Source: Phyllobates terribilis (lineage: Eukaryota). From it: a stretch of 64,000 nucleotides of DNA. The notes under the pieces were generated by a model. The model searched no databases and was not told where the DNA came from. It saw only the letters and a program-made list of their open reading frames with translations. The translations under genes were made by a program, and so were the position numbers. Each line of letters opens with the position of its first letter. The stretch's first letter is position 1. The DNA lies in contig NW_027362762.1 of NCBI RefSeq assembly GCF_046119375.1, positions 666,066,001 to 666,130,000 on the forward strand, written 5' to 3'. This document shows, piece by piece, positions 9,752 to 41,970 of this stretch.

Positions 9752-11276
9752 CAGCTGCTTCTCACAAAATTAGAATATCATCAAAAAGTGAATTTATTTC
9801 AGTTCTTTAACACAAAAAGTGACTCGTATATTATATAGAGTCATTGCAAACAGAGTGATCTATTTCAAGTGTTTATTTCTGTTAATATTGTTGATTATGG
9901 CTTACAGCCAATGAAAACACAAAAGTCATTATCTCAGTAAATTAGAATACTTTATAACAACAGCTTGAAAAATGATTTTATAATCCAAAATGTTTGCCTA
10001 CTGAAATGTATGTTCAGTAAATGCACTCAGTACTTGGTCGGGGCTCCTTTTGCATCAATTACTGCATCAATGCGGCGTCGCATGGAGGCGATCAGCCTGT
10101 GGCACTGCTGAGGTGTTATGGAAGCCCAGGTTGCTTTGAAGGTGTCTGGTGTCTCTCATCTTCCTCTTGACAATACCCCATAGAGAATGGGGTTAAGGTC
10201 AGGCGAGTTTGCTGGCCAATCAAGCACAGTGATGCTGTTGTTTTTAAACCAGGTTTTGGTACTTTTGGCAGTGTGGATAGGTGCCAAGTCCTGCTGGAGA
10301 ATGACATTTCCATCTCCAAAAAGCTTGTCAGCAGAGGGAAGCATGAAGTGCTCTAAGATTTCCTGGTAGACGGCTGCGCTGACTTTGGTCTTGATAAAAC
10401 ACAGTGAACCTACACCAGCGGATAACATGGCTCCCCAAACTATCACTGATTGTGGAAACTTCACCCTAGACCTCAAGCAGCTTGGTTTGTGTGCCTCTCC
10501 ACTCTTCCTAAAGGCTCTGGTACCTTGATTTCCAAATGAAATGCAAAATTTACTTTCATCTGAAAACAACACCTTGAACCACTGAGCAACAGTCCAGGTC
10601 TTTTTCTCCTTGGCCCAGGTAAGACGCTTCTGACGTTGTCTATTGGTCATGAGTGCCTTGACGCAAGGAATGCGACACTTGTAGCCCATGTCCTGGATAC
10701 ATCTGTGTGTGGTGGCTCTTGAAGCAATGACTCCAGCAGCAGTCCACTCCTTGTGAATCTCCCCCAAATTTTTGAATGCCCTTTTCTTAACAATCCTTTC
10801 AAGGCTGCGGTTATCCCGGTTGCTTGTGCACCTTTTTCTACCACACTTTTTCCTTCCACTCAACTTTCCACTAATATGCTTGGATACAGCAATCTGTGAC
10901 CAGCCAGCTTCTATAGCAATGACCTTTTGTGGCTTACCTTCCTTGTCGAGTGTGTCAATGACTGCCTTTTGGACATCTGTCAAGTCAGCAATCTTCCACA
11001 TGATTGTGGAGCCTACTGAAACAGACTAAGGGACCTTTTTAAACACGTAGGAAGCCTTTGCAGGTGTTTTTTGTTAATTATTCTAATTTACTGAGATAAT
11101 TACTTTTGTGTTTTCATTGGCTGTAAGCCATAATCATCAACATTAACAGAAATAAACACTTGAAATAGATCATTGTTTGTAATGACTTTATATAATATAT
11201 GCGTTTCACTTTTTGTATTGAAGAACTGAAATAAATTAACTTTTTGATGATATTTTAATTTAGTGAGAAGCACTTA
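9752..11276 (-). mobile_element. Tc1-like DNA transposon (DD34E type) with ~200-bp TIRs
   Basis: TA|CAGCTGCTTCTCACAAAATTAGAATATC and its inverse at the right end followed by TA; transposase ORF on the minus strand. Confidence 0.92.
10156..11001 (-). pseudogene. Tc1 transposase, C-terminally disrupted
   Basis: HTH region with GRKR, FSDESKF, QQDLAP, WPANSPDLNPI; 34 residues between the second D and the expected E; the E codon is lost. Confidence 0.9.
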
Positions 11277-24046: not shown

Positions 24047-27000
24047 GTACCCCCTCTTCTTTGAGGATCCTTCGGATCCCCTAGGCCCAGGTTTATCAGG
24101 AAACCTCTTGTGAAATGCTCTGACAAGTCTGGAAGCAGAAACATCATCTGCCCTCACCCATGAGTTATCCTCGGGACCAAAACCTTTCCAAGCGACGAGA
24201 TACTGAAAACTCCCTCTATACCGTCTCGAATTAAGGATGCGGGAAATTTCATATTCCCCGTCCTCCACCACCGGAGGAACAGTGGCAGTGGCGTCTCTAT
24301 CTGATACATAAGCTTTTTTCAATAGAGAAACATGAAACACCGGATTAATCTTCCAGGAGGTAGGAACCTCCAACCTAACAGCAGATTGGTTAACTACCTG
24401 AAGCACCTTAAAGGGCCCTACAAACTTGGGACCCAATTTTTTAGAAGGAATCCTCAGCCACAGATTCTTAGAGGACAACCAAACCATGTCACCAACCGTA
24501 AACAAAACCTCTTGACGTTTCCTGTCAAAGTACCTCTTAGATTTTTTGTTAGCCTCCTGAAGATTACCACGCACATCCGTCCAAACTCTTTCCAAATCAC
24601 CGGAAAAACTCTCCTCCTCAGGCACAGCCGATACCAATTTGGAGAATGACCCAAAAGACGGATGTCTCCCAGAACAACAAAAAAAAGGCGAACACCCAGC
24701 AGAAGAGGATGTATGGTTGTTAAGAGCAAATTCAGCAAGCGGCAGAAACTCAGACCACCCCTCTTGATTGTCTGCCACAAAACAACGCAAGAACTGCTCA
24801 ACATCCTGGTTCATCCTTTCTGTCTGGCCATTAGACTCAGGATGATATCCAGATGAAAATGACACATGAACTCCCAACCTGTCACAAAAGGCACGAACTG
24901 AGGTCCCCTATCAGAAACAATGTCAGTAGGAACACCATGGAGTCTGACAATCTCCTTGACAAAGGCCTTAGCGAGTGTCTTAGCGCAGGGCAGTTTGATG
25001 AAAGGAACCAAGTGACACATCTTGCTAAAACGGTCCATGACCACCCAGATGACCATGAAACCCTCAGAGGGGGGAAGGTCAGTAATAAAGTCCACAGCCT
25101 GATGTGTCCAAGGTGCACTAGGAACCTCCAGAGGGCAAAGCAACCCCGCAGCAGGAGTATGTGAAGACTTAGATCTAGCACACACAGTACATTGACGCAC
25201 CCACTTAATGACCTCCTTCTGCCATCCAAGCCACCAAAAACTGTGACCCACAAGTCTCTTGGTCTCAGAAATTCCAGGATGACCTGCCAACCGAGACTCA
25301 TGACACTCAACAAACAAATCTCTCCTAAAGGTCCTAGGCACAAACAACCTCCCATGGGGAGTGGTAGATGGGGCATTCTCCTGTGCTTTAAGAATCTCAT
25401 CTTCCAAAACGGAGTCCAATGCAGCAATCACAACACCTTCTTGCAAAATGCTCTCCTCCTCCTCAGCACCGACCATGGGAGAAAAGCTGCGAGACAAAGC
25501 ATCAGCTTTAACATTCTTGGTACCCGGGATGTAAGTAACGGAAAAATTAAACCGCGAGAAAAAAAGTGCCCACCTAGCCTGACGGGCATTCAAGCGCTTG
25601 GCAGCATCAAGATAGATCAGATTTTTATGATCAGTGAAAACCTGAATGGGAAAATCAGCACCTTCCAAGAGATGACACCAGTGTTCAAATGTGAGTTTAA
25701 TAGCCAGCAATTCCCGATTACCAATATCGTAATTAAGTTCAGTCTCAGAAAATTTTTTTGAAAAAAAGGCACAGGGATGTACTCCATCCTTGTTTTCCTG
25801 AGACAACACCGCACCGACCCCCACAGAAGAAGCATCAACCTCAACCAAAAACGGCTTAGTCACATCAGGCTGCATAAGGATGGGGGCAGAGCTGAACCTC
25901 TCCTTTAGAAACACAAAAGCTTCAATGGCCTCAGTAGTCCACTGAACCGTATTAGAACCTTTCCTGGTGAGATCGGTCAGTGGTTTAACAATAATAGAAA
26001 AATTTTAATGAATTTTCTGTAATAATTGGCGAAACCCAAAAACCTCTGTATCGATTTCAAACCAATAGGCCTAGGCCATTCCTGCACAGCTTGAACTTTC
26101 ACCGGGTCCATCTCAAGCCCTCGCTGGAGATAATGTAGCCCAAAAAACTAATTCTCTGTACAGCGAACTCACATTTCTCCAGCTTAGCAAAAAGCGAATT
26201 GTCAATCAATAACTGCAATACCTCACGTACGCTCCACCAATGAGACTCCAGGTCAGGCGAATAAATCAAAATGTCATCCAAATACACAACCACATTTTTG
26301 CAGATCAAAGGTCTAAGGATGTCATAAATAAGATTCTGATAAAATGCTGGTGCATTGGTAAGACCAAAAGGCATAACCAAATTCTCAAAATGACCCACAG
26401 AAGTGTTAAAAGCAGTCTTCCATTCATCACCCTCCTTCATGCGCAACAAATTGTATGCCCCCCGGAGATCAATTTTAGAGAACCACTTGGCCCCCACTAA
26501 CTGGTTAAACAAATCAGGAATCAATGGCAGTGGGTAGGGATTGCGTACAGTAATTTTATTAATCTCGTGAAAGTCCAAACAAAGACGTAAACCGCCGTCT
26601 TTTTTTTAACAAAAAAAAATCCAACAGCCACAGGTGACTTAGAGGGTCTATTATCACCGGCGGCCATGCTCGTCTGTATGTATTCCTCCAAAGCCTTTCT
26701 CTCAGGAATAGTCAGATTAAATAAACGACTTTTAGGAAGAGTCGCTCCAGGGACAAATTCAATGGTACAATCGTAGTCTCTATGGGGAGGCAACATTTGC
26801 GACTCCTCCTCAGAAAAAACTTTCCAAAAATCCTGAATAGGTACAGGTAATTCCCCTTTATCCACAGCAGCAATGCACCCGTTACAACACCTGTCATAAC
26901 ACTTAGGGCTCCAGGACTTAATTTCATTGGTAGACCAATCCAGTACAGGATTGTGCAATTTTAACCAGGGCAACCCCAAAACTACTGGAGAAGGCAAATT

Positions 27001-27549
27001 ATTTAATACCACCAAATCCAAATTTTCTTGCTGAATGCCATTAATAGTGAGGGGAAATTCATAAACCTTGTGAGTAACACATTTCAAAGGAGAGCCATCG
27101 ACAGAAACCACGGCAATAGGGGATGACAAAGGTTTGGGTTTTAAATTAAGTTTTTCCAAGAATCCCCCATCAATCACAATCAGAGTTGAACCACAATCCA
27201 CAAATACCCGAAATTCAATTAATTCTTCCTGAGCTGCGGTAGTAGCACAAAGAAATACACCCTTAGTGTTTAAACAGGCTATACGGGCGTGACTGACCTT
27301 TTTTTTTCCTTTGTTCATACGAAGCACACAGTTCTTAATGAAATGGTCAGATTTCCCGCAATAAAAGCACAAACCTTCAGAAAACCTGCGGTCTTTTTCC
27401 TGAGAGTGGGGTGACATCGCCCGAATCTCCATCGACTCTCCAGTGTCAGTACAGACCCTCTCAAAACTCGGAGCTGACATGGCAGAGGATTTACTCTCAT
27501 TAACCCTTGCACGCAGTCTCCTGTCCTCCCGTATAGCTAATTGCATTGC
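23623..27549 (-). mobile_element. 5'-truncated Gypsy chromovirus (copy 2, same family as 4194-9180)
   Basis: 3' LTR 23623-24046; PPT at 24047-24060; minus-strand ORFs match copy 1 PR, RT, RH, IN and chromodomain; similarity ends in gag at ~27549. Confidence 0.95.
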
Positions 27550-28919
27550 AAGATGGTCAGTGGCGATGACGCCATCATTAGCGTCAGCATCCCACTTGTC
27601 TATCTTTTGCAATGCTCTCTGCAGAGAATTAAAGTGGAGGCATTGCAGCCAGAGTATGATGAGATGGATCAAGAAGCCGTTATGGGCGATTACACACAGC
27701 CCAGCCTCATCTCATCCCAATGTGCATTGGGGGACAATGAGGGAGAGGAGGAGGTGGAGAAGGAAGAACAGGAGCTGGTATCATGCACTGTAGACGGTAG
27801 CACCTGTACAACTGTCATACAGTCGGTTCAGCATGGGTGGCCTGAGGACAGGGGGAGGAGGAGGAGGAGAACATGGTCAGTCGTCATCTTGGTGAGGACA
27901 CGGAAGTCTTGCCCGTTACCAGTCTGGCACGCATGGCTGACTTTATGTTACGCTGCCTTAACCATGACCCTCGCGTTGCCAAAATGTTGGGTGACTGTCA
28001 ATACTGGTTGGTGACACTTTTAAGCCCCCGCTACAAGGAAAACTTTCACTTTCTTATTCCTGAGGTGGAGAGGTCTACAAAAATGGGGCAGTACCGGAAG
28101 GCCCTTGCTGCAGAACAGTTAAAATAATTCCCATCTAAACACGCTAGCGGCAGAGGTCAAAGTTGGTTGACCAACCAAGGCGTACAGGCGAGAGAGATGC
28201 AACTCAGATCCAGCAGAGGCAGGGGAACACTGTCAACATTCTGGGACAGTTTTCTGAGACCCGCCCAGCTTATAGGCCCTGAGGCGTGGGGTACTCTCAC
28301 AAGGAGTGGAAAGTTTCAAAAGATGGTGAGGGAGTACCTTGCCGACCGTACCAGCGTCCTCCGTGATTCCTCTGTGCCTTTTAATTATTGGGTATCCAAG
28401 CTGGACACTTGGAATGAACTCGCTCTATATGCCTTGGAGGTCCTGGCCTGCCCTGCCGCTAGCGTGTTATTGGAGTGTGTTTTTAGTGCCGCTAGGGGAA
28501 TTATAACTGATAAGCGCACTCACCTGTCAACTGACAATGCTGACAAGCTGACCCTTATCAAAATGAACAAGGGCTGGATTGGGCCAGACTTCTCATCACC
28601 GCCAAATGACAGCAGAATAACATAAAGTCAAATCCACTGTGTTATTTCGGGAGGTGTATTCCCATGCACCGCTTCACACCCACAAATGGATATACGCTTC
28701 CTCAATTCGGCTTTTTTTTGCTCTTCTCCTTATCCTCAACCTCCACCACCACTATACCACCAGGGTGACCGTGGTCCGTGTTGCCAGCATTGCAAGTTCC
28801 TCCGTCCTAATTTTGGGCAGCTTTTGCTTGGAAGGCATAGGCATAGGCAAAGACTATGGGAGACCCACTCCCCAATAATGGGAATAATGTTTTTTATATG
28901 CTGTACTGCATGGCTCTTG

Positions 28920-31900
28920 TAAGGAGAATTAAAACCGTCTTGTTAAACCACTCTGACCTCCACGTCTCTTCCAAGGGGCATTTAAACCGTGTTGTTAAGC
29001 TACTGCAACCTCCACGTCTCCTCCAAGGGGCATTAAAACCGTCTTTTTAAGCTAATGCGACCTCCACCACTTTTCCAAGGGGCATTAAAACCGACTTGTT
29101 AAGCTACTGCGACCTCCAACACTTTTCCAAGGGGCATTAAAGCTGTCTTGTTAAGCTACTGCGACTTCCACCACTTTTCCAAGGGGCATTAAAGCTGTCT
29201 TGTTAAGCTACTGTGACCTCTACCACTCTTCCAAGGGGCATTAAAACTATCTTGTTAAGCTACTGCAACCTCCACGTCTCTTCCAAGGGGCATTAAAACC
29301 ATCTTGTTAAGCTAATGCAACCTCCACCACTTTTCCAAGGAGCATTAAAACAGTCTTGTTAAGCTGCTGCAACCTCCACGTCTCTTCCAAGGGGCATTTA
29401 AACCGTCTTGTTAAGCTACTGCAACCTCCACGTCTCTTCCAAGGGGCATTAAAACCATCTTGTTAAGCTAATGCGACCTCCACCACTTTTCCAAGGGGCA
29501 TTAATACCGTCTTGTTAAGCTACTGCGACCTCCACCACTTTTCCAAGGGTCATTAAAGCAGTCTTGTTAAGCTACTGCGACCTCCACCACTTTTCCAAGG
29601 GGCATTAAAGCTGTCTTATTAAGCTACTGTGACCTCCACCACTCTTCCAAGGGGCATTAAAACCGTCTTGTTAAGCTACTGCGACCTCCACGTCTCTTCC
29701 AAAGGGCATTAAAACCATCTTGTTAAACCACTCTGACCTCCACGTCTCTTCCAAGGGGCATTTAAACCGTGTTGTTAAGCTACTGCAACCTCCACTTCTC
29801 CTCCAAGGGGCATTAAAACCGTCTTTTAAAGCTAATGCGACCTCCACCACTTTTCCAAGGGGCATTAAAACCGTCTTGTTAAGCTACTGCGACCTCCACC
29901 ACTTTTCTAAGGGGCATTAAAGCTGTCTTGTTAAACTACTGCGACCTCCACCACTTTTCCAAGGGGCATAAAAGCTGTCTTGTTAAGCTACTGTGACCTC
30001 TACCACTCTTCCAAGGGGCATTAAAACTGTCTTGTTAAGCTACTGCAACCTCCACGTCTCTTCCAAGGGGCATTAAAACCATCTTGTTAAGCTAATGCAA
30101 CCTCCACCACTTTTCCAAGGGGCATTAAAACCGTCTTGTTAAGCTACTGCAACCTCCACGTCTCTTCCAAGGGGCATTTAAACCGTCTTGTTAAGCTACT
30201 GCAACCTCCACGTCTCTTCCAAGGGGCATTAAAACCATCTTGTTAAGCTAATGCGACCTCCACCACTTTTCCAAGGGGCATTAAAACCGTCTTGTTAAGC
30301 TACTGCGACCTCCACCACTTTTCCAAGGGTCATTAAAGCAGTCTTGTTAAGCTACTGCGACCTCCACCACTTTTCCAAGGGGCATTAAAGCTGTCTTATT
30401 AAGCTACTGTGACCTCCACCACTCTTCCAAGGGGCATTAAAACCGTCTTGTTAAGCTACTGCGACCTCCACGTCTCTTCCAAGGGGCATTAAAACCATCT
30501 TGTTAAACCACTCTGACCTCCACGTCTCTTCCAAGGGGCATTAAAACCATCTTGTTAAGCTAATGCGAACTCCACCTCTTTTCCAAGGGGCATTAAAACT
30601 GTCTTGTTAAGCTACTGCAACTTACATCACTCTTCCAAGGGGCATTAAAGCTGTCTTGTTAAGCTACTGCGACCTCCACCACTTTTCCAAGGGGCATTAA
30701 AGTTGTCTTATTAAGCTACTGTGACCTCCACCACTCTTCCAAGGGGCATTAAAACCGTCTTGTTAAGCTACTGCGACCTCCACCACTTCCCCAAGGGGCA
30801 TTAAAACCGTCTTGTTAAGCTACTGTAACATCCACCACTCTTCCAAGGGGCATTTAAAACGTCTTGTTAAGCTACTGCAACCTCCACGTCTCTTCCAAGG
30901 GGCATTAAAACCGTCTTGTTAAGCTAATGCGACCTCCACCACTTTTCCAAGGGGCATTAAAACCGTCTTGTTAAGCTACTGCGACCTCCACCACTTTTCC
31001 AAGGGTCATTAAAGCTGTCTTGTTAAGCTACTGCGACCTCCACCACTTTTCCAAGGGGCATTAAAGTTGTCTTATTAAGCTACTGTGACCTCCACCACTC
31101 TTCCAAGGGGCATTAAAACCGTCTTGTTAAGCTACTGCGACCTCCACGTCTCTTCCAAGGGGCATTAAAACCATCTTGTTAAACCACTCTGACCTCCACA
31201 TCTCTTCCAAGGGGCATTAAAACCGTCTTGTTAAGCTAATGCGAACTCCACCTCTTTTCCAAGGGGCATTAAAACTGTCTTGTTAAGCTACTGTAACTCA
31301 CACCACTCTTCCAAGGGGAATTAAAGCTATCTTGTTAAGCTACTGTGACCTCCACCACTTTTCCAAGGGGCATTAAAACCATCTTGTTAAGCTACTGCGA
31401 CCTCCACCGCTCTTCCAAGGGGCATTAAAACCATCTTGTTAAACCACTCTGACCTCCACCTCTCTTCCAAGGGGCATTAAAACCATCTTGTTAAGCTTCT
31501 GTGACCTCCACCACTTCTCCAAGGGGCATTAAAACCATCTTGTTAAGCTACTGTAACATCCACCACTCTTCCAAGGGGCATTTAAAACGTCTTGTTAAGC
31601 TACTGCAACCTCCACGTCTCTTCCAAGGGTCATTAAAACCGTCTTGTTAAGCTAATGAGACCTTCACCACTTTTCCAAGGGGCATTAAAACCATCTTGTT
31701 AAGCTACTGCGACCTCCACGTCTCTTCCAGGTGTTTTTTATACCGTCTTGTTAAGCTACTGCAACCTCCACGTCTCTTCCAAGGGGCATTAAAACCATCT
31801 TGTTAAACCGCTCTGACCTCCACCTCTCTTTCAAGGGGCATTAAAACCATCTTGTTAAGCTTCTGTGACCTCCACCACTTTTCCAAGAGGCATTAAAACC

Positions 31901-32090
31901 ATCTTGTTTAGCTACTGCGACCTCCACGTCTCTTCCAAGGGGCATTTAAACCATCTTGTTAAGCTACTGCAACCTCCACGTCTCTTCCAAGGGGCATTAA
32001 AACCATCTTGTTAAGCTAATGCGACCTCCACCATTTTTCCAAGGGGCATTGATATTGTCTTTTTATTCCACTGCAAACTCCACCATTCTT
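28920..32090 (+). repeat. 52-bp satellite, ~60 units, with a 780-bp (15-mer) higher-order repeat
   Basis: Unit CCAAGGGGCATTAAAACCGTCTTGTTAAGCTACTGCGACCTCCACCACTTTT. Variant AAACC(A/G)CTCTGACC at 28945, 29725, 30505, 31181, 31441, 31805. CCAAGGGTCATTAAAGCAG variant at ~29543 and ~30323. Confidence 0.95.
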
Positions 32091-33075
32091 CCAACGGGCA
32101 TTGCATTTCCTCCTAATTTTAGTCAGCTTTTGGTTTTCAATGCATAGGCGAACACTAAGTGAGACCCACTCCCCAATAATGGGTAGAAGGTTTATAGTAT
32201 GCTGTTATCCACGTCTGTTTCAAGGGCCATTGCAGTTCCTCATAATTTTTGGAAAGCCTTCCATTCACTGCTTAGGCCAACAGTGCACAGGAGACCCAGT
32301 TGCTATAAATGGAAAAAACGCTTTAGTTAAGGCCCTCTGACCTCCACGTCACTTCCAAGGGGCATTGGAGTGCCTCGAAATTTTTGGTAGGCATTGCACT
32401 CACTGCATGCCCTATAACTGTTTAGCCGAACCTCTCCTTTTGGTACAGAAACATATCCTACTAGACATGTTTGGTTGACTGGCCTGATATTGATGTGAAT
32501 GGTCCCTGTTCCTCCTGTTCTTTCGCTTTTGCCACCACCTCATCCATCATTCATCACCTGAAGCTTTGTTTTAACGGGAGTCATAGAACTGGGATAGTAG
32601 CAGGAAAACATCCAGCAATCCTCGGAGGAGGTAGGATATGCGCCAAAACGCTGACCACCTCAGGCCTAGCCGCTACTACATACATGTGCTTGCATTCCAA
32701 GAAAACAAAGCAGATGCTAACTTCTATCATCATCATCATGCTCCTCACCTTGGCACTCTCAACTCCCCTGATGGAGAAGCCAGGGCCCACTGGAGGAGTC
32801 TGGTTCTCTGGTGGGCTCGTCCAATGCTGCCCTAAAGCAGGCCGGGCTAAGAAAAGTGTGGGGGGATGTTACAATATGTCACCAAAAAAAATATCAGAAT
32901 CAGGGGAATCCGTTGAAGTGTTCCAGAGTAATTACTTCATAAAGTAACAGTGGTCAGAATTGAAAAAATTGGCCTGGTCACGAGGGCAAAAACAGGCTCT
33001 TACGCGAAGTGGTTAAAACAAAATTCTGCCACACAGAGGCTTTTGCACAAGTCTAAAAAAAAAATTGCACTTTAA

Positions 33076-34138
33076 CCCCTTCACAACGTATATTTTCATC
33101 ATCGGCTGTGTCCCTGCCCAGAGTGTGAACCCACATCTTTAACCGCACTTTATGGCTGATTTAATCAGCCATCAATTGCTTCTAACAGCAAGATCCACCC
33201 GCGGCTTTTAACTAGTTAAATACCGCTGTCATTCACTGACAGTGGTATTTAGCATGCACAGGCAGGAAGCACATCATTGATCATGCCAATCGGCGCACAC
33301 GATACATGATCGTGGGTCGCCGATGGGTTGTCATGACAGCCGGGGGTCCACTGAAACACTACTATGTATAGCACAGGCGATCATACGATTGCAGCTTCAG
33401 GTCTCCTAAGAGAACTATTAAATACAGTAAAAAGGAAAAAAAATTTCAATAATGTAAAAAACTCCACAAACATTACCCCCCCCCCAAAAAAACTCCAAAA
33501 AATACACATATTTGGTACTGCCTCATTCAGAAATGTCCAGTCTATCAAAATATAAAATAAATTAATCTGATCGGTAAACGACATAAGGAGAAAAAAATCA
33601 AAACACCAGAATTATATTTTTTTTGGTAGGCAATTAAAGGCGATTAAAATATTGTATCCTTCCCAAAATTGTATGAGTAAAAATGTAAGCTAAGGGCACA
33701 AAAAATAAGCCATAATACAGCCCCCGATCCTGAAAAATGAGGACGTTACGGGACAAAAGTGGAAAAAAGTTTTTAACAAATTTTTTTCACCACTTAAATA
33801 AAAAAATTATACATATTTGGTATCTACGTACTCATACTGACCTGGTGACTCACATTGTCAGGTCAGTTTTACCATATATTAAACATGGTAAATAATAAAA
33901 AAAAGAACTATTGTGGAATTGCACTTTTTTGCATTCTCACTGCCCTTGAAATCTTTTTCCCTTTTTTTCAGTACACTAAGTGACAGAATGAATGATGTCA
34001 TTGAAAAGTAGAACTCATCCCACAAACAAAATGCAAGCCCTCATACGGCTATATGACTGGAAAAATACAAATGTTATGGCCCCTAGAAGAATGAAGGGGG
34101 GTTGACGAAAAATGAAAAATCGCCAGGAGGTGGAAGGG
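33076..34138. mobile_element. Non-autonomous piggyBac-type element, ~1.06 kb
   Basis: TTAA|CCCCTTC...GGAAGGG|TTAA. Confidence 0.75.
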
Positions 34139-35205
34139 TTAAGCAACAATCAAGCAATGCATAAACAATCAGTTTACAAGGCTTATTTACTCCAAAGACA
34201 TACTGATAGGGAATTTAGATTGTGAGCTTCAATGGCAACAGTGTGGATGATATCTGTAAAGCACTGTGAAATTAATAGTGCTTTATAAGGGAGTAAAGTA
34301 AATAATAATAAATGAATTTTATGCTGGATAGATCACATGATGATAACCAAGTTAACATTGTCCTTGAGCTTTCAAAGGGAAAGACTGAACGACCAGACAA
34401 GAAAACTGCATCCTCGGTCATTCTAACAAAAACATCTTTTTCGGTGGAAAATAGAGAAATGTACAATGCTGTATCTATATATATAATCGTCTTATCCCGT
34501 CTGTCTGTCTGTCTGTCCAGGAAATCCCGCGTCGCTCATTGGTCCGGCAGCGGCCAATCAGCGCCGGGGGATTTCTAAAAAAAAGATGGCGGCCGTTAGC
34601 GGCTCATCTCCCGGCCGGCAACAGCAGAAGGAACCCGACCGCCGGACCCATCTGCGGGACGGAGATGCAGCCGGGAGATGAGCGGCGCGAGGCGCTCATC
34701 TCCCGGCCGGTATCAGCGGAAGGACCGCCGGCGCCACTGACCTCCATGCGGAAGGGAGGACCGGGGAGCGGCGCTGCGGGTCGGGATACTTCTGCTGCGA
34801 GACCCGCGATGTCCCGGGTTCTCGCAGCGTAAGTAGCCGCACAGGCAGCGCCGCTCCCCGGTCCTCACCAAGACGATTCGATGATTGGTCGCGGTCTTCG
34901 GACCCGACCAATCACTGATCTTAGCGCAAAACTTAAACACCGCTGTGCTGATTGGTCGCCGACGCTGCCCGCGACCAATCACCACAGCGGTGTTTAAATG
35001 TGGAGCCAAGATCGGTGATTGGTCGCGGCTGATATTTAAATTTGGCGCCCAAATCGGTGATTGGTCGCGGTCAGCGTCCGCGACCAATCAGCACAATAGT
35101 GTTTAACTTTGGCGCCAAGATCAGTCATTGGTCGCGGGCCAAGACAGCGACCAATCACCGATTTGTGCGGCAATTTTAAATAGCGTCCGCGACCAATTGG
35201 ATGTC

Positions 35206-35751
35206 AGCGCCGCTGCCTGTGCGGATACTTCCGCTGCAAGAACCCGGAACATGAGCGGGCGCTCGCAGCAGAAGTATCCGGACTCGCAGCGCCGCTCCCC
35301 GGTCCTCCCTTCACACCGTAGCCGCTGATGTCCCCACTGTATCCGCATGGTGTTACAAAGGTCCGGAAATTTGTGTTAAAAATCGCTGATTGGTCGCTGG
35401 CGCTGCCCGCGACCAATCACCTATTTGGGCGCCAAATTTAAATATCGGCCGCGACCAATCAGCAGAGCGGTGTTTAAATGTGGAGCCAAGATCAGTGATT
35501 GGTCGCGGCCGATATTTAAATTTGGCGCCCAAATCGGTGATTGGTCGCGGGCAGCGCCATCGACCAATCAGCGATTTTTAACACAAATGTCCGGACCTTT
35601 GTAACACCATGCGGATACTGTGGGGACATCAGCGGCTAGGGTGTGAAGGGAGGACCGGGGAGCGGCGCTGCGGGTCGGGATACTTCTGCTCCGAGCGCCC
35701 GCTCATGTCCCGGGTTCTCGCAGCGGAAGTAGCCGCACAGGCAGCGGCGCT
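35206..35751. repeat. 256-bp-arm inverted repeat with a 34-nt spacer inside the Helitron
   Basis: 35206-35461 is a near-perfect reverse complement of 35496-35751. Confidence 0.9.
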
Positions 35752-35859
35752 CCCCGGTCCTCACTAATACGATTCCGCTCCCCGCTCCTCATCAATACGA
35801 TTCGCTGATTGGTCGCGCTCTCCACACCCGACCAATCAGTGATCTTGGCGCTAAAGTTA

Positions 35860-37345
35860 AACACCGCTCTGCTGATTGGTCGCGGCCGCTGCCCGCAACC
35901 AATCACCGATTTGGGCGCCACATTTAAATAGCGGCCACGACCAATCACCGATCTTGCCGCCACATTTAAACACTGCCGTGCTGATTGGACGCGGACGCAG
36001 GACGCGTCCAATCAGCGAGATTGGCGCCAAATTTAAACAACGCTCTGCTGATTGGTTGCGGACTCCAGCCGCGACCAATCAACGAGATTGGCGCCAAATT
36101 TAAGCAACGCTCTGCTGATTGATCGCGGTCCGCTGGCCGAGATCAATCAGCAGTATTGGCGCAAAATTTAAACACCGCTCTGCTGATTGGTCGCGGTTGT
36201 CGGCCGTGACCAGTCAGCAGTATTGGTGCCAAATTTAAACCTCACTCTGCTGATTGGTCACAACCACCGGCCGCGACCAATCTGCGTTTTTTGTGCCAAA
36301 ATTAAACAACGCTCTGCTGATTGGTCACGATCGCCGGCCGCGACCAATCAGCAGCATTGGGGCCAAATGTAAACCCCGCTCTGCTGATTGGTCGCGGTCG
36401 CCGGCCGCGACCCATCAGCATTATTGGTGCCAAATTTAAACCCTGCTCTGCTGATTGGTCGCGTCCGCCAGCCGCGAACAATCAGCGAGATTGGCGCCAA
36501 ATTTAAACACCTCTCTGCTGATTGGTAGCGGTTGTTGGTCGTGACCAATCAGCAGTATTGGCGCCAAATGTAAACCTCACTCTGCTGATTGGTCGCAACC
36601 ACCGGCCACGACCAATCTGCGCTTTTTGTGACAAATTTAAACACCGCTCTGCTGATTGGACGCGGCCGGTGACCATTCAGCAATTTTGGAGCCAAATTTA
36701 AACCCCACTCTGCATCGCTCTGCTGATTGGTCGCGGTCGCCGGCCGCGACCAATCAGCACTATTGTCGCCAAATTTAAACACCTCTTTGCTGATTGGTCG
36801 CGGTCGCGACTAATCAGCGATTTTGGTACCAAATTTAAACACCGCACTGCTGATTGGTCGCGGCCGCCATCCGCGACCAATCAGCGAGATTGGCGCCAAA
36901 TTTAAACAACGCTCTGCTGATTGGTCGCGGTCGCCGGCCTCGACCAATCAGCGATTTTGGCACCAAATTTAAACAACACTCTGCTGTTTGGGCGCGGCCG
37001 GCGACCAATCAGCGATTTTGGCGCCAAATTTAAACCCCGCTCTGCATCGCTCTGCTGATTGGTCGCGGTCGGCGGCCGCGACCAGTCAGCAGTATTGGCG
37101 CCAAATTTAAACACCGCTCTGCAGATTGGTCGTGACTAATCAGCGATTTTGGTGCCAAATTTAAACACGCTCTCCAGTCCTCACTAACATGGTTCGCTGA
37201 TTGGTCGCGGCCGCCGCCCGCGTCCAATCATCGATATTGCCGCCAAATTTAAACACCGCTTAGCTGATTGGTCGCGGTTGCCGAACGCGACCAATCAGCG
37301 ATTTTGGCCCCAAATTTAAACACAGCTCTGCTGATTGCGCCCGGT
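35860..37345 (+). repeat. 67-bp palindromic tandem repeat, ~20 units
   Basis: Consensus CTCTGCTGATTGGTCGCGGTCGCCGGCCGCGACCAATCAGCAGTATTGGCGCCAAATTTAAACACCG; the 67-bp period also shows in the ORF track (36187, 36254, 36321). Confidence 0.92.
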
Positions 37346-37420
37346 CGGCCGCATACCTATTCTAGAATACCCGATGCATTAGAATCGGGCCACCATCTAG
37401 TGCATATATATATATATATA

Positions 37421-37990
37421 TACTACTCAAAAAAATAAAGGGAACACTAAAATACCAAATCCTAGAGATGACAGAATGAAATAGTGGAATGCGTTGAGAA
37501 CAATAAAACATTAAAATGATCAATGTAAATAAAAATTAATATTCAATGGAGGTCTGGATTTGGAATGATACTCAAAATCAAAGTCGAAAATCTAATTACA
37601 GGCTGATCGAACTTCAGTGGAAATGCCTCAAGAAAAGGAAATGATGTTCAGTAGTGTGTATGGCCTCCACCTGCCTGTATGACCTCCCTACAACGTATGG
37701 GCATGCTCCTGATGAGGCAGCGGATGGTCTCCTGTGGGATCTCCTCCCAGACCTGGACTAAAGCATCCGCCAACTCCTGGACAGTGTGTGGTGCAAAGTG
37801 GCATTGGTGGATGGAACGAGACATGATGTCCCAGATGTTCTCGATTGAATTTAGGTCATTGATGATTTTTGTGTGATTTTGATGTCAGCACATTCAACTT
37901 TGTACAGAACAAAGTATTCAATGAGAATATTTCATTCATTCAGATCTAGGATGTGTTACTTGAGTGTTCCCTTTATTTTTTTGAGCAGTG
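37421..37990 (-). mobile_element. Internally deleted Tc1-like element (~570 bp)
   Basis: TIR (C/T)ACT(G/A)CTCAAAAAAATAAAGGGAACAC flanked by TA; the minus strand encodes DLNSIENIWDIM..QELADALVQVWEEIPQE. Confidence 0.85.
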
Positions 37991-38824
37991 TATATTTATG
38001 CTAACAGAAGCATAATTTAATAATTGATTAATTAAGCAAAGCAATATTGGAGACTTATAATACACTATTCAATATTATAATTGAAACACCAAGAAGGAAA
38101 AGTCGGGATATAATTGAAATCATAGGGTGAAAAGACATGTTAATGATAAGAAAAAAAATGAAAACAAAATTTTCAAAATATCTCGATTTATTTAGTATTA
38201 AGTCTGAGCACCATGAAGGGTTCATGAAACCGATTAACACTTTTCTGATTCTGGCGATCAGGAGGTATCATCATGGTATGCTTTCAGAACTTTTCATCTC
38301 CTCTACTGTGAGGCTACATCGATCTCCCCAGGGCAGTAGCTGCTCTCTTCATTTCCACTTTTTACACTGATACTACATGATTTGTATTGTTTGTTATTCA
38401 TCTGTTGATGCAAAGTACTCAGTATAAATAGATTTGATTTCTGATCCCCGAAAACACAGCAATGACCCAATACAAAGTGGTTAATGGAAAGCAATTGGTA
38501 AACCAAGCCACAACATTTACATCTTACTCATGCTTCGAAGCAAGTGATACAACTTATACATCTAAATAATTAATAAGGAATATGATCTGAAATAACCTAA
38601 TTAAACAAGTAACTCAGCCATTGCGGCAATGGACCACAAAGGAAATTATCCACAGTCAATAAGTAAAAACCTAAACCATGATGGATTCCTAGGATAGGAC
38701 TGTATTATAGACAATATATCAAACACACAAATATCACAATCTAAATGCTTAATAAACTGCCTAACGTCTTAGGTGAAGGTGCATTCTCACATACTGTATG
38801 AACAGCAAAAGTGCATGTACTTAA

Positions 38825-39946: not shown

Positions 39947-41460
39947 CAGTACAGACCAAAAGTTTGGACACACCTTCTCATTTAAAGATTTTTCTGTATT
40001 TTCATGAGTATGAAAATTGTACATTCACACTGAAGGCATCAAAACTTTGAATTCACACATGTGGAATTATATACTTAACAAAAAAGGGTGAAAGAACTGA
40101 AAATATGTCTTATATTCTAGGTTCTTCAAAGTAGCCACCTTTTGCTTTGATGACTGCTTTGCACACTCTTGGCATTCTCTTGATGAGCTTCAAGAGGTTG
40201 TTACCGGAAATGTTTTTCACTTCACAGGTGTGCCCTGTCAGGTTTAATAAGTGGGATTTCTTGCCTTATAAATGGGGATGGGGCCATCAGTTGTGTTGTG
40301 CAGAAGTCTGGTGGATACACAGCTGATAGTCCTACTGAATTGACTGTTAGAATTTGTATTATGGCAAGAAAAAAGCAGCTACGTAAAGAAAAATGAGTGG
40401 CCATCATTACTTTAAGAAATGAAGGTCAGTCAGTCCGAAAAATTGGGAAAACTTTGAAAGTGTCCCCAAGTGCAGTTGCAAAAACCATCAAGCGCTACAA
40501 AGAAACTGGCTCACATGAGGACCGCCCCAGGAAAGGAAGACCAAGAGTCACCTCTGATTCTGAGGATAAGTTTATCCGAGTCACCAGCCTCAGAAATCGC
40601 AGGTTAACAGCAGCTCAGATTACAGACCAGGTCAATGCCACACAGAATTCTAGCAGCAAACACATCTCTACAACAACTGTTAAGAGGAGACTTTGTGCAG
40701 CAGGCCTTCATGGTAAAATAGCTGCTAGGAAACCACTGCTAAGGACAGGCAACAAGCAGAAGAGACTTGTTTGGGCTAAAGAACACAAGGAATGGACATT
40801 AGACCAGTGGAAATCTGTGCTTTGGTCTGATGAGTCCAAATTTGAGATCTTTGGTTCCAACCACTGTGTCTTTGTGCGACGCAGAAAAGGTGAACGGATG
40901 GACTCTACATGCCTGGTTCCCACCGTGAAGCACAGAGGAGGAGGTGTGATGGTGTGGGGGTGCTTTACTGGTGTCACTGTTGGGGATTTATTCAAAATTG
41001 AAGGCATACTGAACCAGCATGGCTACCACAGCATCTTGCAGCGGCATGCTATTCCATCCGGTTTGCGTTTAGCTGGACCATCATTTATTTTTCAACAGGA
41101 CAATGACCCCAAGCACACCTCCAGGCTGTGTAAGGGCTATTTGACCAAGAAGGAGAGTGATGGGGTGCTACGCCAGATGACCTGGCCTCCACAGTCACCA
41201 GACCTGAACCCAATCGAGATAGTTTGGGGTGAGCTGGACCGCAAGGTGAAGGCAAAAGGGCCAACAAGTGCTAAGCATCTCTGGGAACTCCTTCAAGATT
41301 GTTGGAAGACCATTTCCGGTGACTATCTCTTGAAGCTCATCAAGAGAATGCCAAGAGTGTGCATAGACATATTTTCAGTTGTTTCACACTTTTTTGTTAA
41401 CTATATAATTCCACATGTGTTAATTCATAGTTTTAATGCCTTCAGTGTGAATGTACAATT
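39947..41460 (+). mobile_element. Tc1-like transposon of DD38E (Intruder-type) family, 3' truncated
   Basis: TA|CAGTACAGACCAAAAGTTTGGACACACC left TIR; partial right TIR ends ~41460. Confidence 0.88.
40361..41363 (+). pseudogene. DD38E transposase with an early stop and a 3' deletion
   Basis: MARKKQLRKEK*VAII (TGA at 40394); WSDESKFE; QQD-38 aa-E counted in the ORF track; transposase-like sequence ends after MPRVC. Confidence 0.88.
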
Positions 41461-41499
41461 CACTTTTCCATCTAAACGGAGTTCAATGGATTCATTCAC

Positions 41500-41970
41500 A
41501 AGCTTAAAAATATGTATAGATTAATATCTGTTCAATGTCCTCCACACTACTGTCAGGTATGTGTAATAGCCTGACTAAATGCTAGCAATCTACACTAAAG
41601 AATTTATTTTCTTTATATCTCCAACACAGTATTACTTTGAATAGGTTCATACACAATGGTTTAATGAAGATTTTAAAGTGGATCCATTCCAAAAGTCCAT
41701 CGCAATCAATACAAATACACTTTGAATACTCTTTGTATTCAAAATAATGGCAAATCCAACTTGCCATTCACATGGCAAGTTTTTTGAGAGTTTTATTTCA
41801 GCAAAGTTGAAAACATATCGCGGTATCTCCTCCACTTCTGAAAATCTCAAGTGAAAAAGGCAGCAAAGTACCGTTAACGGAACAAAATGCTCCATAAACT
41901 GGTAAAAAAAGCACCTCCTAAAACCAAAAAAGTAGCATTTCCTGAAGTAGATTCCTGTTGAAACCTCCAT
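41500..41970 (-). pseudogene. Degenerate LINE-1-like ORF2 C-terminal remnant
   Basis: Weak similarity by eye to the L1 ORF2 tail (KNLPCEW..; downstream Cys-rich remnants); many stops. Confidence 0.35.

What the first reader, a model, noticed from the sequence alone, without database searches (positions are those of the whole stretch)
34474..37400. Helitron built from a tandem NF-Y + E2F/CDE-CHR cell-cycle promoter grammar
Seen: each 67-bp unit has a 17-bp inverted repeat (CTGCTGATTGGTCGCGG / CCGCGACCAATCAGCAG) giving two opposed GACCAATCAG boxes, followed by TTGGCGCCAAATTTAAA, which contains TTTGGCGC on the minus strand and TGGCGC + 4 nt + TTTAAA on the plus strand. About 20 units plus earlier inverted blocks; CpGs largely retained. 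Established: RRCCAATCAG is the NF-Y consensus, TTTSSCGC the E2F consensus, and a CDE 4 nt upstream of a CHR (TTTGAA, variant TTTAAA) together with CCAAT boxes is the DREAM/MuvB-regulated promoter architecture. Inference: a mobile multimerised cell-cycle element that may time Helitron activity to S/G2, spread cell-cycle enhancers or titrate these factors. I know of no description of this, but could not search.
Basis: partly seen in the sequence, partly recalled or inferred. Interest (0 to 1): 0.85.

Follow-up and report, generated by a model that had tools for sequence, protein, structure and literature searches.

The report
Helitron carrying tandem CCAAT-box promoter modules
A 2.9-kb rolling-circle transposon (Helitron) copy in a vertebrate genome is filled with about 30 repeats of a short module that reads like an NF-Y/E2F/CHR promoter; the boxes were conserved while the array was built but are now decaying in this copy, so it is an intriguing but unproven case of a transposon spreading cell-cycle-type regulatory sites.

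Summary
Window 34474-37400 has the hallmarks of a non-autonomous Helitron: A|TC...CTAG|T and a 3' hairpin. Many contigs from other copies diverge at its 5' end. It carries a 67-bp array (20.8 copies) and a ~1-kb palindrome of older modules. The unit consensus has two ideal NF-Y boxes 24 and 43 bp apart, a GC palindrome fitting the E2F consensus, and GGCGC-N4-TTTAAA (CDE/CHR form). No composition-matched shuffle of 200,000 reproduced this combination.

Among 19 units, non-CpG box columns vary 5% against 20% for spacers. That difference lies in old variants shared between units. Unit-private changes hit boxes and spacers alike. About 30% of consensus CpGs are lost, mostly as TpG/CpA, and only 1 of 20 units keeps the full grammar.

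The family is very abundant (roughly 10^4 copies by a crude depth ratio), present in a sister species, and under-represented in RNA.

My reading is that the array is a multimerised NF-Y-based promoter or enhancer module of the Helitron family, selected in the active lineage and dead here. Cell-cycle gating is plausible but untested. Precedents exist in Helitron-borne HSF and PHE1 sites, E2F sites on Brassicaceae transposons, and NF-Y on LTR12.

The scan's first readers noted the same array on other DNA of this genome.

The parts
34474..37400 (+). Whole non-autonomous Helitron copy (2,927 bp), inserted between host A (34473) and T (37401)
   Evidence: 5'-TC and 3'-CTAG read directly. In DNA run X5, 23 contigs of other copies diverge from the window exactly at 34477 with unlike A/T-rich flanks. 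Summed depth falls about 13-fold after 37405. There is no ORF with a Rep or helicase domain in the element or the window.
34474..34519 (+). Left terminal sequence: TC followed by a TA-rich run
   Evidence: Same style as the TA-rich left end described for vertebrate Heli1Xen1 (PMC12001565).
34520..34575 (+). 5' palindrome (GGAAATCCC ... GGGGATTTC) enclosing two opposed CCAAT boxes (ATTGG 34538-34542, CCAAT 34554-34558, 16 bp apart)
   Evidence: Its right box region matches the array unit at 18 of 20 bases; 1 of 2,000 shuffles scores as well.
34583..34593 (+). Exact AAGATGGCGGC, the YY1 core-promoter motif (motif identity from my own knowledge), 25 nt downstream of the 5' CCAAT box
   Evidence: Single exact match in the whole window. 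Noticed post hoc.
34975..35988 (.). About 1-kb imperfect palindrome made of GC-rich hairpin blocks and about 11 older CCAAT modules in both orientations. Inner arms are 35206-35461 and 35496-35751.
   Evidence: Self-inverse at 84.7% over 1,032 bp. Inner arms are 256 nt at 96%. Modules are listed.
35869..37337 (+). Main tandem array: one 109-bp double unit plus 20 units of 60-75 bp (modal 67 bp). All are oriented ATTGG - CCAAT - GC palindrome - TTTAAA in the sense of the Helitron.
37338..37400 (+). Right terminal sequence: hairpin CCCGAT/ATCGGG (37370-37375 and 37384-37389), 7 nt, then CTAG (37397-37400)
   Evidence: The stem is predicted in both the MFE and centroid structures, but the fold is weak overall (z = -1.45).

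Best explanation
This is a dead, non-autonomous copy of a very abundant canonical Helitron family. Its internal minisatellite is a multimerised copy of the family's own promoter or enhancer module.

Each module has:
- two ideal NF-Y (CCAAT) boxes, spaced so that consecutive boxes lie 24 and 43 bp apart;
- a GC palindrome that fits the E2F/CDE consensus;
- a highly conserved A/T block (TTTAAA), which could be a CHR for MuvB/LIN54 or a TATA-like element.

Shown here:
- the Helitron anatomy;
- the motif content and spacing;
- the boxes were kept while spacers diverged during the building of the array;
- this particular copy is now decaying neutrally with methylation-type CpG loss.

Inferred:
- in transposition-competent relatives the module recruits NF-Y, a ubiquitous pioneer-type factor, to drive RepHel transcription. 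This would parallel the tandem monomers that form the mouse L1 promoter;
- the E2F/CHR part may add proliferation or S/G2 dependence. That would suit an element which needs host DNA synthesis for rolling-circle transposition.

I put NF-Y function in the active lineage at about 0.65 and genuine cell-cycle gating at about 0.3.
For: Helitron hallmarks and a multi-copy 5' boundary.

Motif density, element versus the rest of the window:
- RRCCAATSR: 44 vs 8
- TTTSSCGC: 12 vs 7
- GGCGC-N4-TTYRAA: 10 vs 0

In composition-matched shuffles of the unit, two or more NF-Y 9-mers occur at 0.08%, an E2F 8-mer at 1%, and CDE-N4-CHR at 0.07%. All three together occurred in 0 of 200,000 shuffles.

Conservation:
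- Non-CpG box columns are 5.4% variant against 20.3% for spacer columns, p = 4e-4 by column.
- Old shared variants: 7 types in 34 box columns against 13 types in 15 spacer columns.
- The CCAAT boxes and the TTTAAA block persist in the diverged older modules.

Spacing. Box distances of 24 and 43 bp coincide with two of the distance classes of double CCAAT boxes bound by NF-Y in vivo (24-27 and 43 bp; minimum 19 bp). The distances are measured from the unit consensus; the classes are from PMC4889920.

A related twin-CCAAT module plus an exact YY1 motif sits at the very 5' end of the element.

Literature:
- TTTAAA is a functional CHR, with the CDE 4 nt upstream and CCAAT boxes further upstream (PMC4176359).
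- In Xenopus, the 5' end of an autonomous vertebrate Helitron shows myb and foxn4 ChIP peaks (PMC12001565). Myb is a MuvB partner.
- Unverified first-stage notes place the same array upstream of RepHel elsewhere in this genome.
Against: - There are no binding, chromatin or TSS data.
- This copy has no ORF downstream of the array, so I did not see the array's position relative to RepHel.
- Only 1 of 20 units keeps the whole grammar.
- Unit-private mutations hit boxes as often as spacers: 16/646 vs 11/285, p = 0.29.
- About 30% of consensus CpGs are lost, 78% of them as C>T or G>A.
- The RNA/DNA depth ratio of the family is 0.0002-0.007, against 0.02-0.06 for the neighbouring Tc1-like repeat. 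This is a crude measure.
- Units are related by duplication, so the conservation statistics are not from independent samples.
- The motif classes were named after seeing the consensus.
- The E2F consensus is absent from the older type-B modules.
Confidence: 0.55

Rival explanations
1. Neutral Helitron-borne minisatellite. The array arose by slippage or template switching during rolling-circle replication. The resemblance to NF-Y/E2F/CHR sites has no function. The apparent conservation reflects recent amplification from a few founder units and gene conversion.
For: - Internal tandem arrays are common in Helitrons and Helentrons without a known function (PMC7492417; the 166-bp minisatellite of Heli2Xen in PMC12001565).
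- Higher-order 332-bp structure.
- Array length differs among copies (joints).
- This copy decays neutrally.
- Low RNA representation.
Against: - The joint motif content was not reproduced in any of 200,000 shuffles.
- Old variants avoid box columns about 4-fold.
- Boxes persist in modules that have otherwise diverged to about 75-85% identity.
- The 24 and 43 bp box spacing matches NF-Y-bound classes (PMC4889920).
Confidence: 0.22
2. Captured host promoter. The module is a fragment of a host cell-cycle or housekeeping gene promoter picked up by the Helitron and then multiplied. This is a statement about origin and is compatible with either function or neutrality.
For: - Helitrons capture host sequence, including promoters and exons (PMC12001565).
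- An unverified note in this genome describes another Helitron with a host-like promoter.
- The module looks like a complete CpG-island-type proximal promoter.
Against: - No host source could be searched with these tools.
- A related CCAAT module sits at the extreme 5' end next to the left terminus, which suggests an element-intrinsic sequence.
- No exon-like sequence accompanies it.
Confidence: 0.1
3. Structural role in transposition. The palindromic units form hairpins in the single-stranded intermediate. They would act on RepHel progression or termination, or serve as Rep-binding iterons, rather than as transcription-factor sites.
For: - Each unit holds a 15-17-bp inverted repeat plus a 10-bp palindrome.
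- The variable columns coincide with the loop and the linkers.
- Two units carry complementary double changes in both arms.
- The left half of the element is a nested palindrome.
Against: - Arm pairs: 245 unchanged, 33 one-sided breaks, only 2 compensated (about 0.4 expected by chance), so pairing is not maintained.
- The best-conserved block (CCAAATTTAAAC) is not part of the hairpin.
- No Rfam family reached its gathering score, which suggests no known structured RNA.
Confidence: 0.08

Closest known systems
Canonical vertebrate non-autonomous Helitrons, e.g. Heli1Xen1 of frogs, toads, caecilians, lizards and bichirs (PMC12001565)
   Same: - TC...CTAG termini, a TA-rich left end, and a CCCG-type subterminal hairpin.
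- Up to more than 20,000 non-autonomous copies per genome.
- A presumed 5' promoter, with myb and foxn4 ChIP peaks in Xenopus.
   Different: - The hairpin sequence differs (CCCGAT here, CCCGTTA there).
- That paper describes no CCAAT array.
Helitron-borne transcription-factor sites: HSF-1 heat-shock elements in Caenorhabditis Helitrons (PMC6927752) and PHE1 MADS-box sites in Arabidopsis Helitrons (PMC7329337)
   Same: A Helitron family carries and disperses dense, partly overlapping or tandem binding motifs for a host factor.
   Different: - Different factors, and invertebrate or plant hosts.
- Binding and gene-regulatory effects were shown there and not here.
- Here the cargo is a composite module in a long regular array.
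E2F sites amplified by transposons (mainly MITEs) in Brassicaceae (reviewed in PMC7329337)
   Same: A cell-cycle factor motif is multiplied by DNA transposons. The published suggestion is that binding may promote replication or repair and so aid transposition.
   Different: Plant elements that are mostly MITEs with single sites, not a Helitron array combined with NF-Y and CHR motifs.
NF-Y-bound LTRs (LTR12/ERV1, MER, RLTR10; PMC3730095, PMC12065363, PMC4889920)
   Same: Transposable elements with multiple high-quality CCAAT boxes that serve as NF-Y-dependent promoters.
   Different: - Those are retroviral LTRs with a 19-bp box spacing.
- This is a DNA rolling-circle element with 24 and 43 bp spacing and 40+ boxes per copy.
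CCAAT + CDE/CHR promoters of G2/M genes (cyclin B1/B2, CDK1, CDC25C; PMC4176359, PMC3287175)
   Same: Several CCAAT boxes upstream of a GC-rich CDE, a 4-nt spacer, and a CHR. TTTAAA is the cyclin B1 variant.
   Different: - Those promoters occur once, at a TSS.
- Here the module is reiterated about 30 times with no gene downstream in this copy.
Tandem-monomer promoters of mouse L1 (PMC9022269, PMC6454616, PMC11602158)
   Same: A transposon promoter built from a variable number of tandem repeats carrying host-factor sites (YY1). The number of repeats varies between copies, and methylation silences them.
   Different: - A retrotransposon with about 200-bp monomers.
- Promoter activity was shown experimentally there.
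Parvovirus P4 promoter driving NS1 (PMC6630270)
   Same: A replicon with an HUH-endonuclease/helicase replication protein, whose promoter needs E2F-family factors. Expression is thereby linked to proliferating cells.
   Different: A virus with a single promoter, not a chromosomal transposon array.

Membership tests
Canonical Helitron (non-autonomous) | 5'-TC and 3'-CTRR termini | tested here: met
   TC at 34474-34475 and CTAG at 37397-37400.
Canonical Helitron (non-autonomous) | Subterminal 3' hairpin about 10 nt before the end | tested here: met
   A 6-bp stem at 37370-37389 ends 11 nt before the last base. It is predicted in both the MFE and centroid structures, but is weak thermodynamically.
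Canonical Helitron (non-autonomous) | Insertion between host A and T without target-site duplication | tested here: met
   A at 34473 and T at 37401, with no duplication. No empty site was recovered among the joints shown (15 shown, 170 not shown).
Canonical Helitron (non-autonomous) | Many copies sharing the ends but with different flanks | tested here: met
   23 contigs diverge at 34477 with unlike flanks. Summed depth is 3e5-1e6 against about 15 for single-copy contigs.
Canonical Helitron (non-autonomous) | Autonomous relatives encoding RepHel | not testable with these tools
   No RepHel in the window. Only unverified first-stage notes mention it.
CCAAT + CDE/CHR cell-cycle promoter (DREAM/MMB target) | CHR (TTYRAA) with a GC-rich CDE 4 nt upstream | tested here: met
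   10 exact GGCGC-N4-TTYRAA matches in the element and 0 in the other 61 kb. Present in 6 of 20 main-array units.
CCAAT + CDE/CHR cell-cycle promoter (DREAM/MMB target) | NF-Y boxes upstream of the CHR at distances that allow double occupancy | tested here: met
   Boxes are 24 and 43 bp apart (unit consensus). The in vivo classes are 24-27, 36 and 43 bp, with a 19-bp minimum (PMC4889920).
CCAAT + CDE/CHR cell-cycle promoter (DREAM/MMB target) | CHR located at or near a transcription start site of a gene | tested here: inconclusive
   There is no downstream ORF in this copy. RNA contigs are short, of low depth and without direction.
CCAAT + CDE/CHR cell-cycle promoter (DREAM/MMB target) | Binding by DREAM/MMB and cell-cycle-dependent activity | not testable with these tools
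   Needs ChIP or CUT&RUN and synchronised reporter assays.
NF-Y-dependent transposon promoter (LTR12-like) | Multiple CCAAT boxes with NF-Y flanks (RRCCAATSR) | tested here: met
   44 matches in 2.9 kb against 8 in 61 kb.
NF-Y-dependent transposon promoter (LTR12-like) | Retroviral LTR origin | tested here: not met
   The element is a Helitron. It may work like LTR12 but is not a member of that group.
Tandem-monomer transposon promoter (mouse L1-like) | Variable number of repeats between copies | tested here: met
   Contigs of other copies skip 227-1,613 bp inside the array (table 5).
Tandem-monomer transposon promoter (mouse L1-like) | Array lies upstream of the element's own ORF and has promoter activity | not testable with these tools
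   This copy lacks the ORF. Only an unverified note (s1-234824) addresses this.
Helitron-borne satellite | Tandem array enclosed by Helitron termini | tested here: met

The most novel reading that the evidence does not exclude
A vertebrate Helitron family has wired RepHel expression to the NF-Y/E2F-DREAM/MuvB cell-cycle programme through a reiterated CCAAT-CDE/CHR module, so that rolling-circle transposition is confined to proliferating S/G2 cells. As a by-product it has scattered roughly 10^4 arrays, several hundred thousand NF-Y-grade boxes, that can act as cell-cycle enhancers or as a sink for these factors.
Probability: 0.15. Interest if true: 0.8.

Novelty: new variant of a known kind. 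Interest (0 to 1): 0.52.

Why it matters
Almost nothing is known about how animal Helitrons are transcribed or why some families reach tens of thousands of copies.

If the module is a working NF-Y/E2F/CHR promoter, three things would follow:
- It would be the first DNA-transposon counterpart of the tandem-monomer L1 promoter and of NF-Y-driven LTRs.
- It would link a replication-dependent transposition mechanism to the host cell cycle, as in parvoviruses.
- It would mark a very large, species-specific reservoir of cell-cycle factor sites in a large vertebrate genome.

All of this is directly testable by ChIP, ATAC and reporter assays. If the module is inert, it is one more Helitron-borne minisatellite.

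Tried and rejected
- Rfam scan of 34300-37600. Only sub-threshold miRNA-hairpin look-alikes caused by the palindromes; no RNA family.
- Hairpin maintenance of the 15-bp arms. 33 one-sided breaks against 2 compensated pairs, so this was rejected as the main constraint.
- Search for RepHel or a host gene in the window. Only Tc1-type transposases and LTR-retrotransposon pol/protease were found.
- Exact-pattern scans for the twin-box arm in viral and metagenome contigs. No hits.
- Search with the longest spurious ORF of the element (124 aa), intended to fish out other copies with flanks. Nothing.
- RNA evidence. RNA runs of the species hold about a third of the sampled words. When laid, they give only 130-200-nt contigs of depth 3-8. 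The RNA/DNA ratio is below that of neighbouring repeats, so there is no evidence of specific transcription.
- The 'other letters' table as a family-wide substitution map. It is confounded by cross-mapping between units. The 16 listed array positions split 9 box to 7 spacer, in proportion to the column numbers.
- Supplementary consensus of Heli1Xen1 for a family comparison. Not held.
- Literature searches for Helitron with CCAAT, NF-Y or E2F. No description of this array was found.
Full report
**What is there**

Window 34474-37400 is a 2,927-bp element. It begins with TC directly after a host A and ends with CTAG directly before a host T. A 6-bp-stem hairpin (37370-37389) ends 11 nt before the last base. 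There is no target-site duplication.

I laid Logan contigs of a DNA run from another individual on the region. 23 contigs of other copies match the window from 34477 rightwards and carry unlike, A/T-rich sequence to the left. Their shared last letters fit A|TCTA (table 7).

Summed word depth inside the element is 3e5-1e6. Single-copy contigs in the flanks have a depth of about 15. Depth falls about 13-fold after 37405. The tool warns that this is not a copy number. As an order of magnitude it points to about 10^4 copies.

The family is also present, with many contigs at least 99% alike, in runs of a second species (organism H).

No Rep or helicase ORF exists in the element or elsewhere in the window. 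The neighbours are Tc1-type and LTR-retrotransposon remains, and I saw no host gene nearby.

Structurally this is therefore a non-autonomous canonical Helitron.

**Internal anatomy**

- The left terminus is followed by a 56-bp palindrome (34520-34575) with two opposed CCAAT boxes.
- 25 nt further on there is an exact AAGATGGCGGC (34583-34593). From my own knowledge this is the YY1 core-promoter motif. It is the only such match in the 64 kb.
- Next come GC-rich hairpin blocks and a ~1-kb imperfect palindrome (34975-35988, 84.7%). Its inner arms are 256 nt at 96%. It contains about 11 older modules in both orientations.
- From 35869 to 37337 runs the main array, all in the sense orientation of the Helitron. 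TRF gives period 67, 20.8 copies and 72% matches, with a 332-bp five-unit higher-order period.

**The module**

The consensus of 19 units has the following parts:
- a 15-17-bp inverted repeat giving CTGATTGGTC and GACCAATCAG;
- a 7-nt loop;
- a short variable linker;
- ATTGGCGCCAAATTTAAAC;
- a variable linker.

The flanks of both boxes fit the NF-Y consensus RRCCAATSR exactly.

TTTGGCGC on the minus strand fits the E2F consensus.

GGCGC + 4 nt + TTTAAA fits the CDE/CHR form. The literature confirms that TTTAAA is a functional CHR (cyclin B1) and binds DREAM as strongly as TTTGAA. It also confirms that the CDE lies 4 nt upstream, that CHRs lie at the TSS, and that CCAAT boxes lie upstream of them (PMC4176359). 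G2/M promoters work through multiple CCAAT plus CDE-CHR elements (PMC4889920).

Counted from the central base, successive main boxes are 24 and 43 bp apart. In human NF-Y ChIP data, double boxes cluster at 24-27, 36 and 43 bp, with 19 bp as the minimum for double occupancy (PMC4889920). The array's spacing therefore matches two classes found in NF-Y-bound regions. The two boxes of the 5'-terminal palindrome are only 16 bp apart and could not be occupied together.

**Is it more than chance?**

Motif counts, element versus the other 61 kb:

| Motif | Element | Rest of window |
|---|---|---|
| RRCCAATSR | 44 | 8 |
| TTTSSCGC | 12 | 7 |
| GGCGC-N4-TTYRAA | 10 | 0 |

Because a repeat multiplies whatever its unit holds, the fair null is the unit itself. 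Among 200,000 composition-matched shuffles of the 67-mer:
- 0.08% had two NF-Y 9-mers;
- 1% had an E2F 8-mer;
- 0.07% had a CDE-N4-CHR;
- none had all three.

The reading is post hoc, but the coincidence is strong.

**Constraint**

Among the 19 units, non-CpG columns inside the named motifs vary in 5.4% of cells. Non-CpG spacer columns vary in 20.3% (Mann-Whitney by column, p = 4e-4).

Splitting the variants by age is more informative:
- Variants shared by two or more units are old and were inherited through unit duplication. There are 7 types in 34 box columns and 13 types in 15 spacer columns.
- Variants private to one unit are recent. They occur at 16/646 box cells and 11/285 spacer cells (odds ratio 0.63, p = 0.29).

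So boxes were spared while the array was being built, but recent mutation hits them about as often as spacers.

The best-kept blocks are TGCTGATTGG, GACCAATCAGC and, above all, CCAAATTTAAAC.

The CpG in the middle of the E2F/CDE core is the least stable motif position. The older 'type B' modules keep the CCAAT box and the A/T block but not the E2F consensus.

Pairing of the inverted-repeat arms is not maintained: 245 pairs unchanged, 33 one-sided breaks and 2 compensated. The constraint therefore looks sequence-specific rather than structural.

**State of this copy**

- CpG o/e is 1.24 at 56% G+C, against 0.45 for the rest of the window.
- Units retain only 6.3 of the 9 consensus CpGs. 39 of 50 changes at CpG columns are C>T or G>A, the signature of methylated-CpG decay.
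- Of 20 units, 18 keep the left box, 12 the right box, 7 the E2F consensus, 16 the CHR, 6 the CDE-N4-CHR, and 1 keeps everything.
- Several box-breaking letters are private to this copy, because other copies read the consensus letter. Cross-mapping between units weakens that table.
- RNA runs of the species contain parts of the element. When laid they give only short contigs of depth 3-8. The RNA/DNA depth ratio is 0.0002-0.007, against 0.02-0.06 for the adjacent Tc1-like repeat.

This is a crude measure, but it gives no sign of active transcription of the family in that sample.

**Interpretation**

The simplest account that fits both the conservation and the decay is as follows. The module is, or was, a working cis-element of the transposition-competent lineage, most likely an NF-Y-based promoter or enhancer unit. 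It was multiplied in tandem, much as mouse L1 promoters are built from monomers (PMC9022269, PMC6454616). This non-autonomous copy then carried it along as passive cargo and is being silenced and eroded.

Three points support an element-intrinsic promoter:
- A related CCAAT module next to an exact YY1 motif sits at the extreme 5' end.
- In Xenopus, the 5' end of an autonomous vertebrate Helitron shows myb and foxn4 ChIP peaks (PMC12001565).
- Unverified first-stage notes on other windows of this genome place the same array upstream of RepHel.

Whether the GC palindrome plus TTTAAA works as E2F/CDE-CHR is open. The alternative is a plain TATA-like element about 20 nt downstream of a CCAAT box. 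I put cell-cycle gating at about 0.3.

The idea is attractive because rolling-circle transposition needs host DNA synthesis. Parvoviruses, which also use an HUH endonuclease-helicase, drive it from an E2F-dependent promoter (PMC6630270).

**Comparison with what is known**

- Helitrons with internal satellites are well known (PMC7492417, PMC12001565).
- Helitrons that carry and disperse binding sites for a host factor are known for HSF-1 in Caenorhabditis (PMC6927752) and PHE1 in Arabidopsis (PMC7329337).
- Amplification of E2F sites by DNA transposons is documented in Brassicaceae, with the suggestion that binding may aid transposition (PMC7329337).
- NF-Y-bound transposons are so far retroviral LTRs (PMC3730095, PMC12065363).

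I found no paper describing a Helitron array of NF-Y plus E2F/CHR modules. The case is therefore a new variant of a known kind, not a new category.

The scan's first readers flagged the same array on at least four other stretches of this genome. Those notes are unverified and are not independent evidence.

**Limits**

- I could not retrieve other genomic copies with flanks, an autonomous copy, an empty site, or any chromatin or TSS data.
- The conservation tests rest on 19 related units of one array.

Noticed in passing
window 37423-37991: A ~570-bp Tc1-type deletion derivative abuts the Helitron's 3' flank after a (TA)n run. It has terminal inverted repeats (ACTCAAAAAAATAAAGGGAACAC and its complement). 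Part of it belongs to an extremely abundant family, with summed DNA depth of 1.6 million at 37668-37798.
   Followed up: partly
window 34583-34593: An exact AAGATGGCGGC (YY1 core-promoter motif, identity from my own knowledge) lies 25 nt downstream of the 5'-terminal CCAAT box of the Helitron. It is the only match in the 64 kb. A second ATGGCGGC core lies on the minus strand at 36863.
   Followed up: partly
window 36112-36179 and 35978-36044: Two array units carry complementary changes in both arms of the inverted repeat (ATTGATC/GATCAAT and GGACGCG/CGCGTCC). The first destroys both CCAAT boxes while keeping the palindrome. About 0.4 such events are expected by chance.
   Followed up: partly
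window 35703-35833: Runs X23 and X37 (kind unknown, same 2020 study, two species) show a 10-50-fold depth spike on this 130-bp GC-rich block. The whole-genome DNA run does not. The libraries are probably reduced-representation (restriction-fragment) libraries rather than a biological signal.
   Followed up: no
window 34131-34261: A separate short high-copy repeat (summed DNA depth about 216,000) lies 200 bp upstream of the Helitron. A low-depth stretch separates them, so it is not part of the element.
   Followed up: no
window 30002-32102: A 52-bp satellite with 40 copies at 87% matches. It lies inside the region another first-stage note calls a giant hAT.
   Followed up: no
window 40397-41524 and 10156-11001: Two ORFs with Tc1/mariner transposase domains (HTH_Tnp_Tc3_2 + DDE_3). 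24811-27672 (minus strand) holds LTR-retrotransposon protease, RNase H and integrase. The neighbourhood is transposon-rich with no evident host gene.
   Followed up: partly
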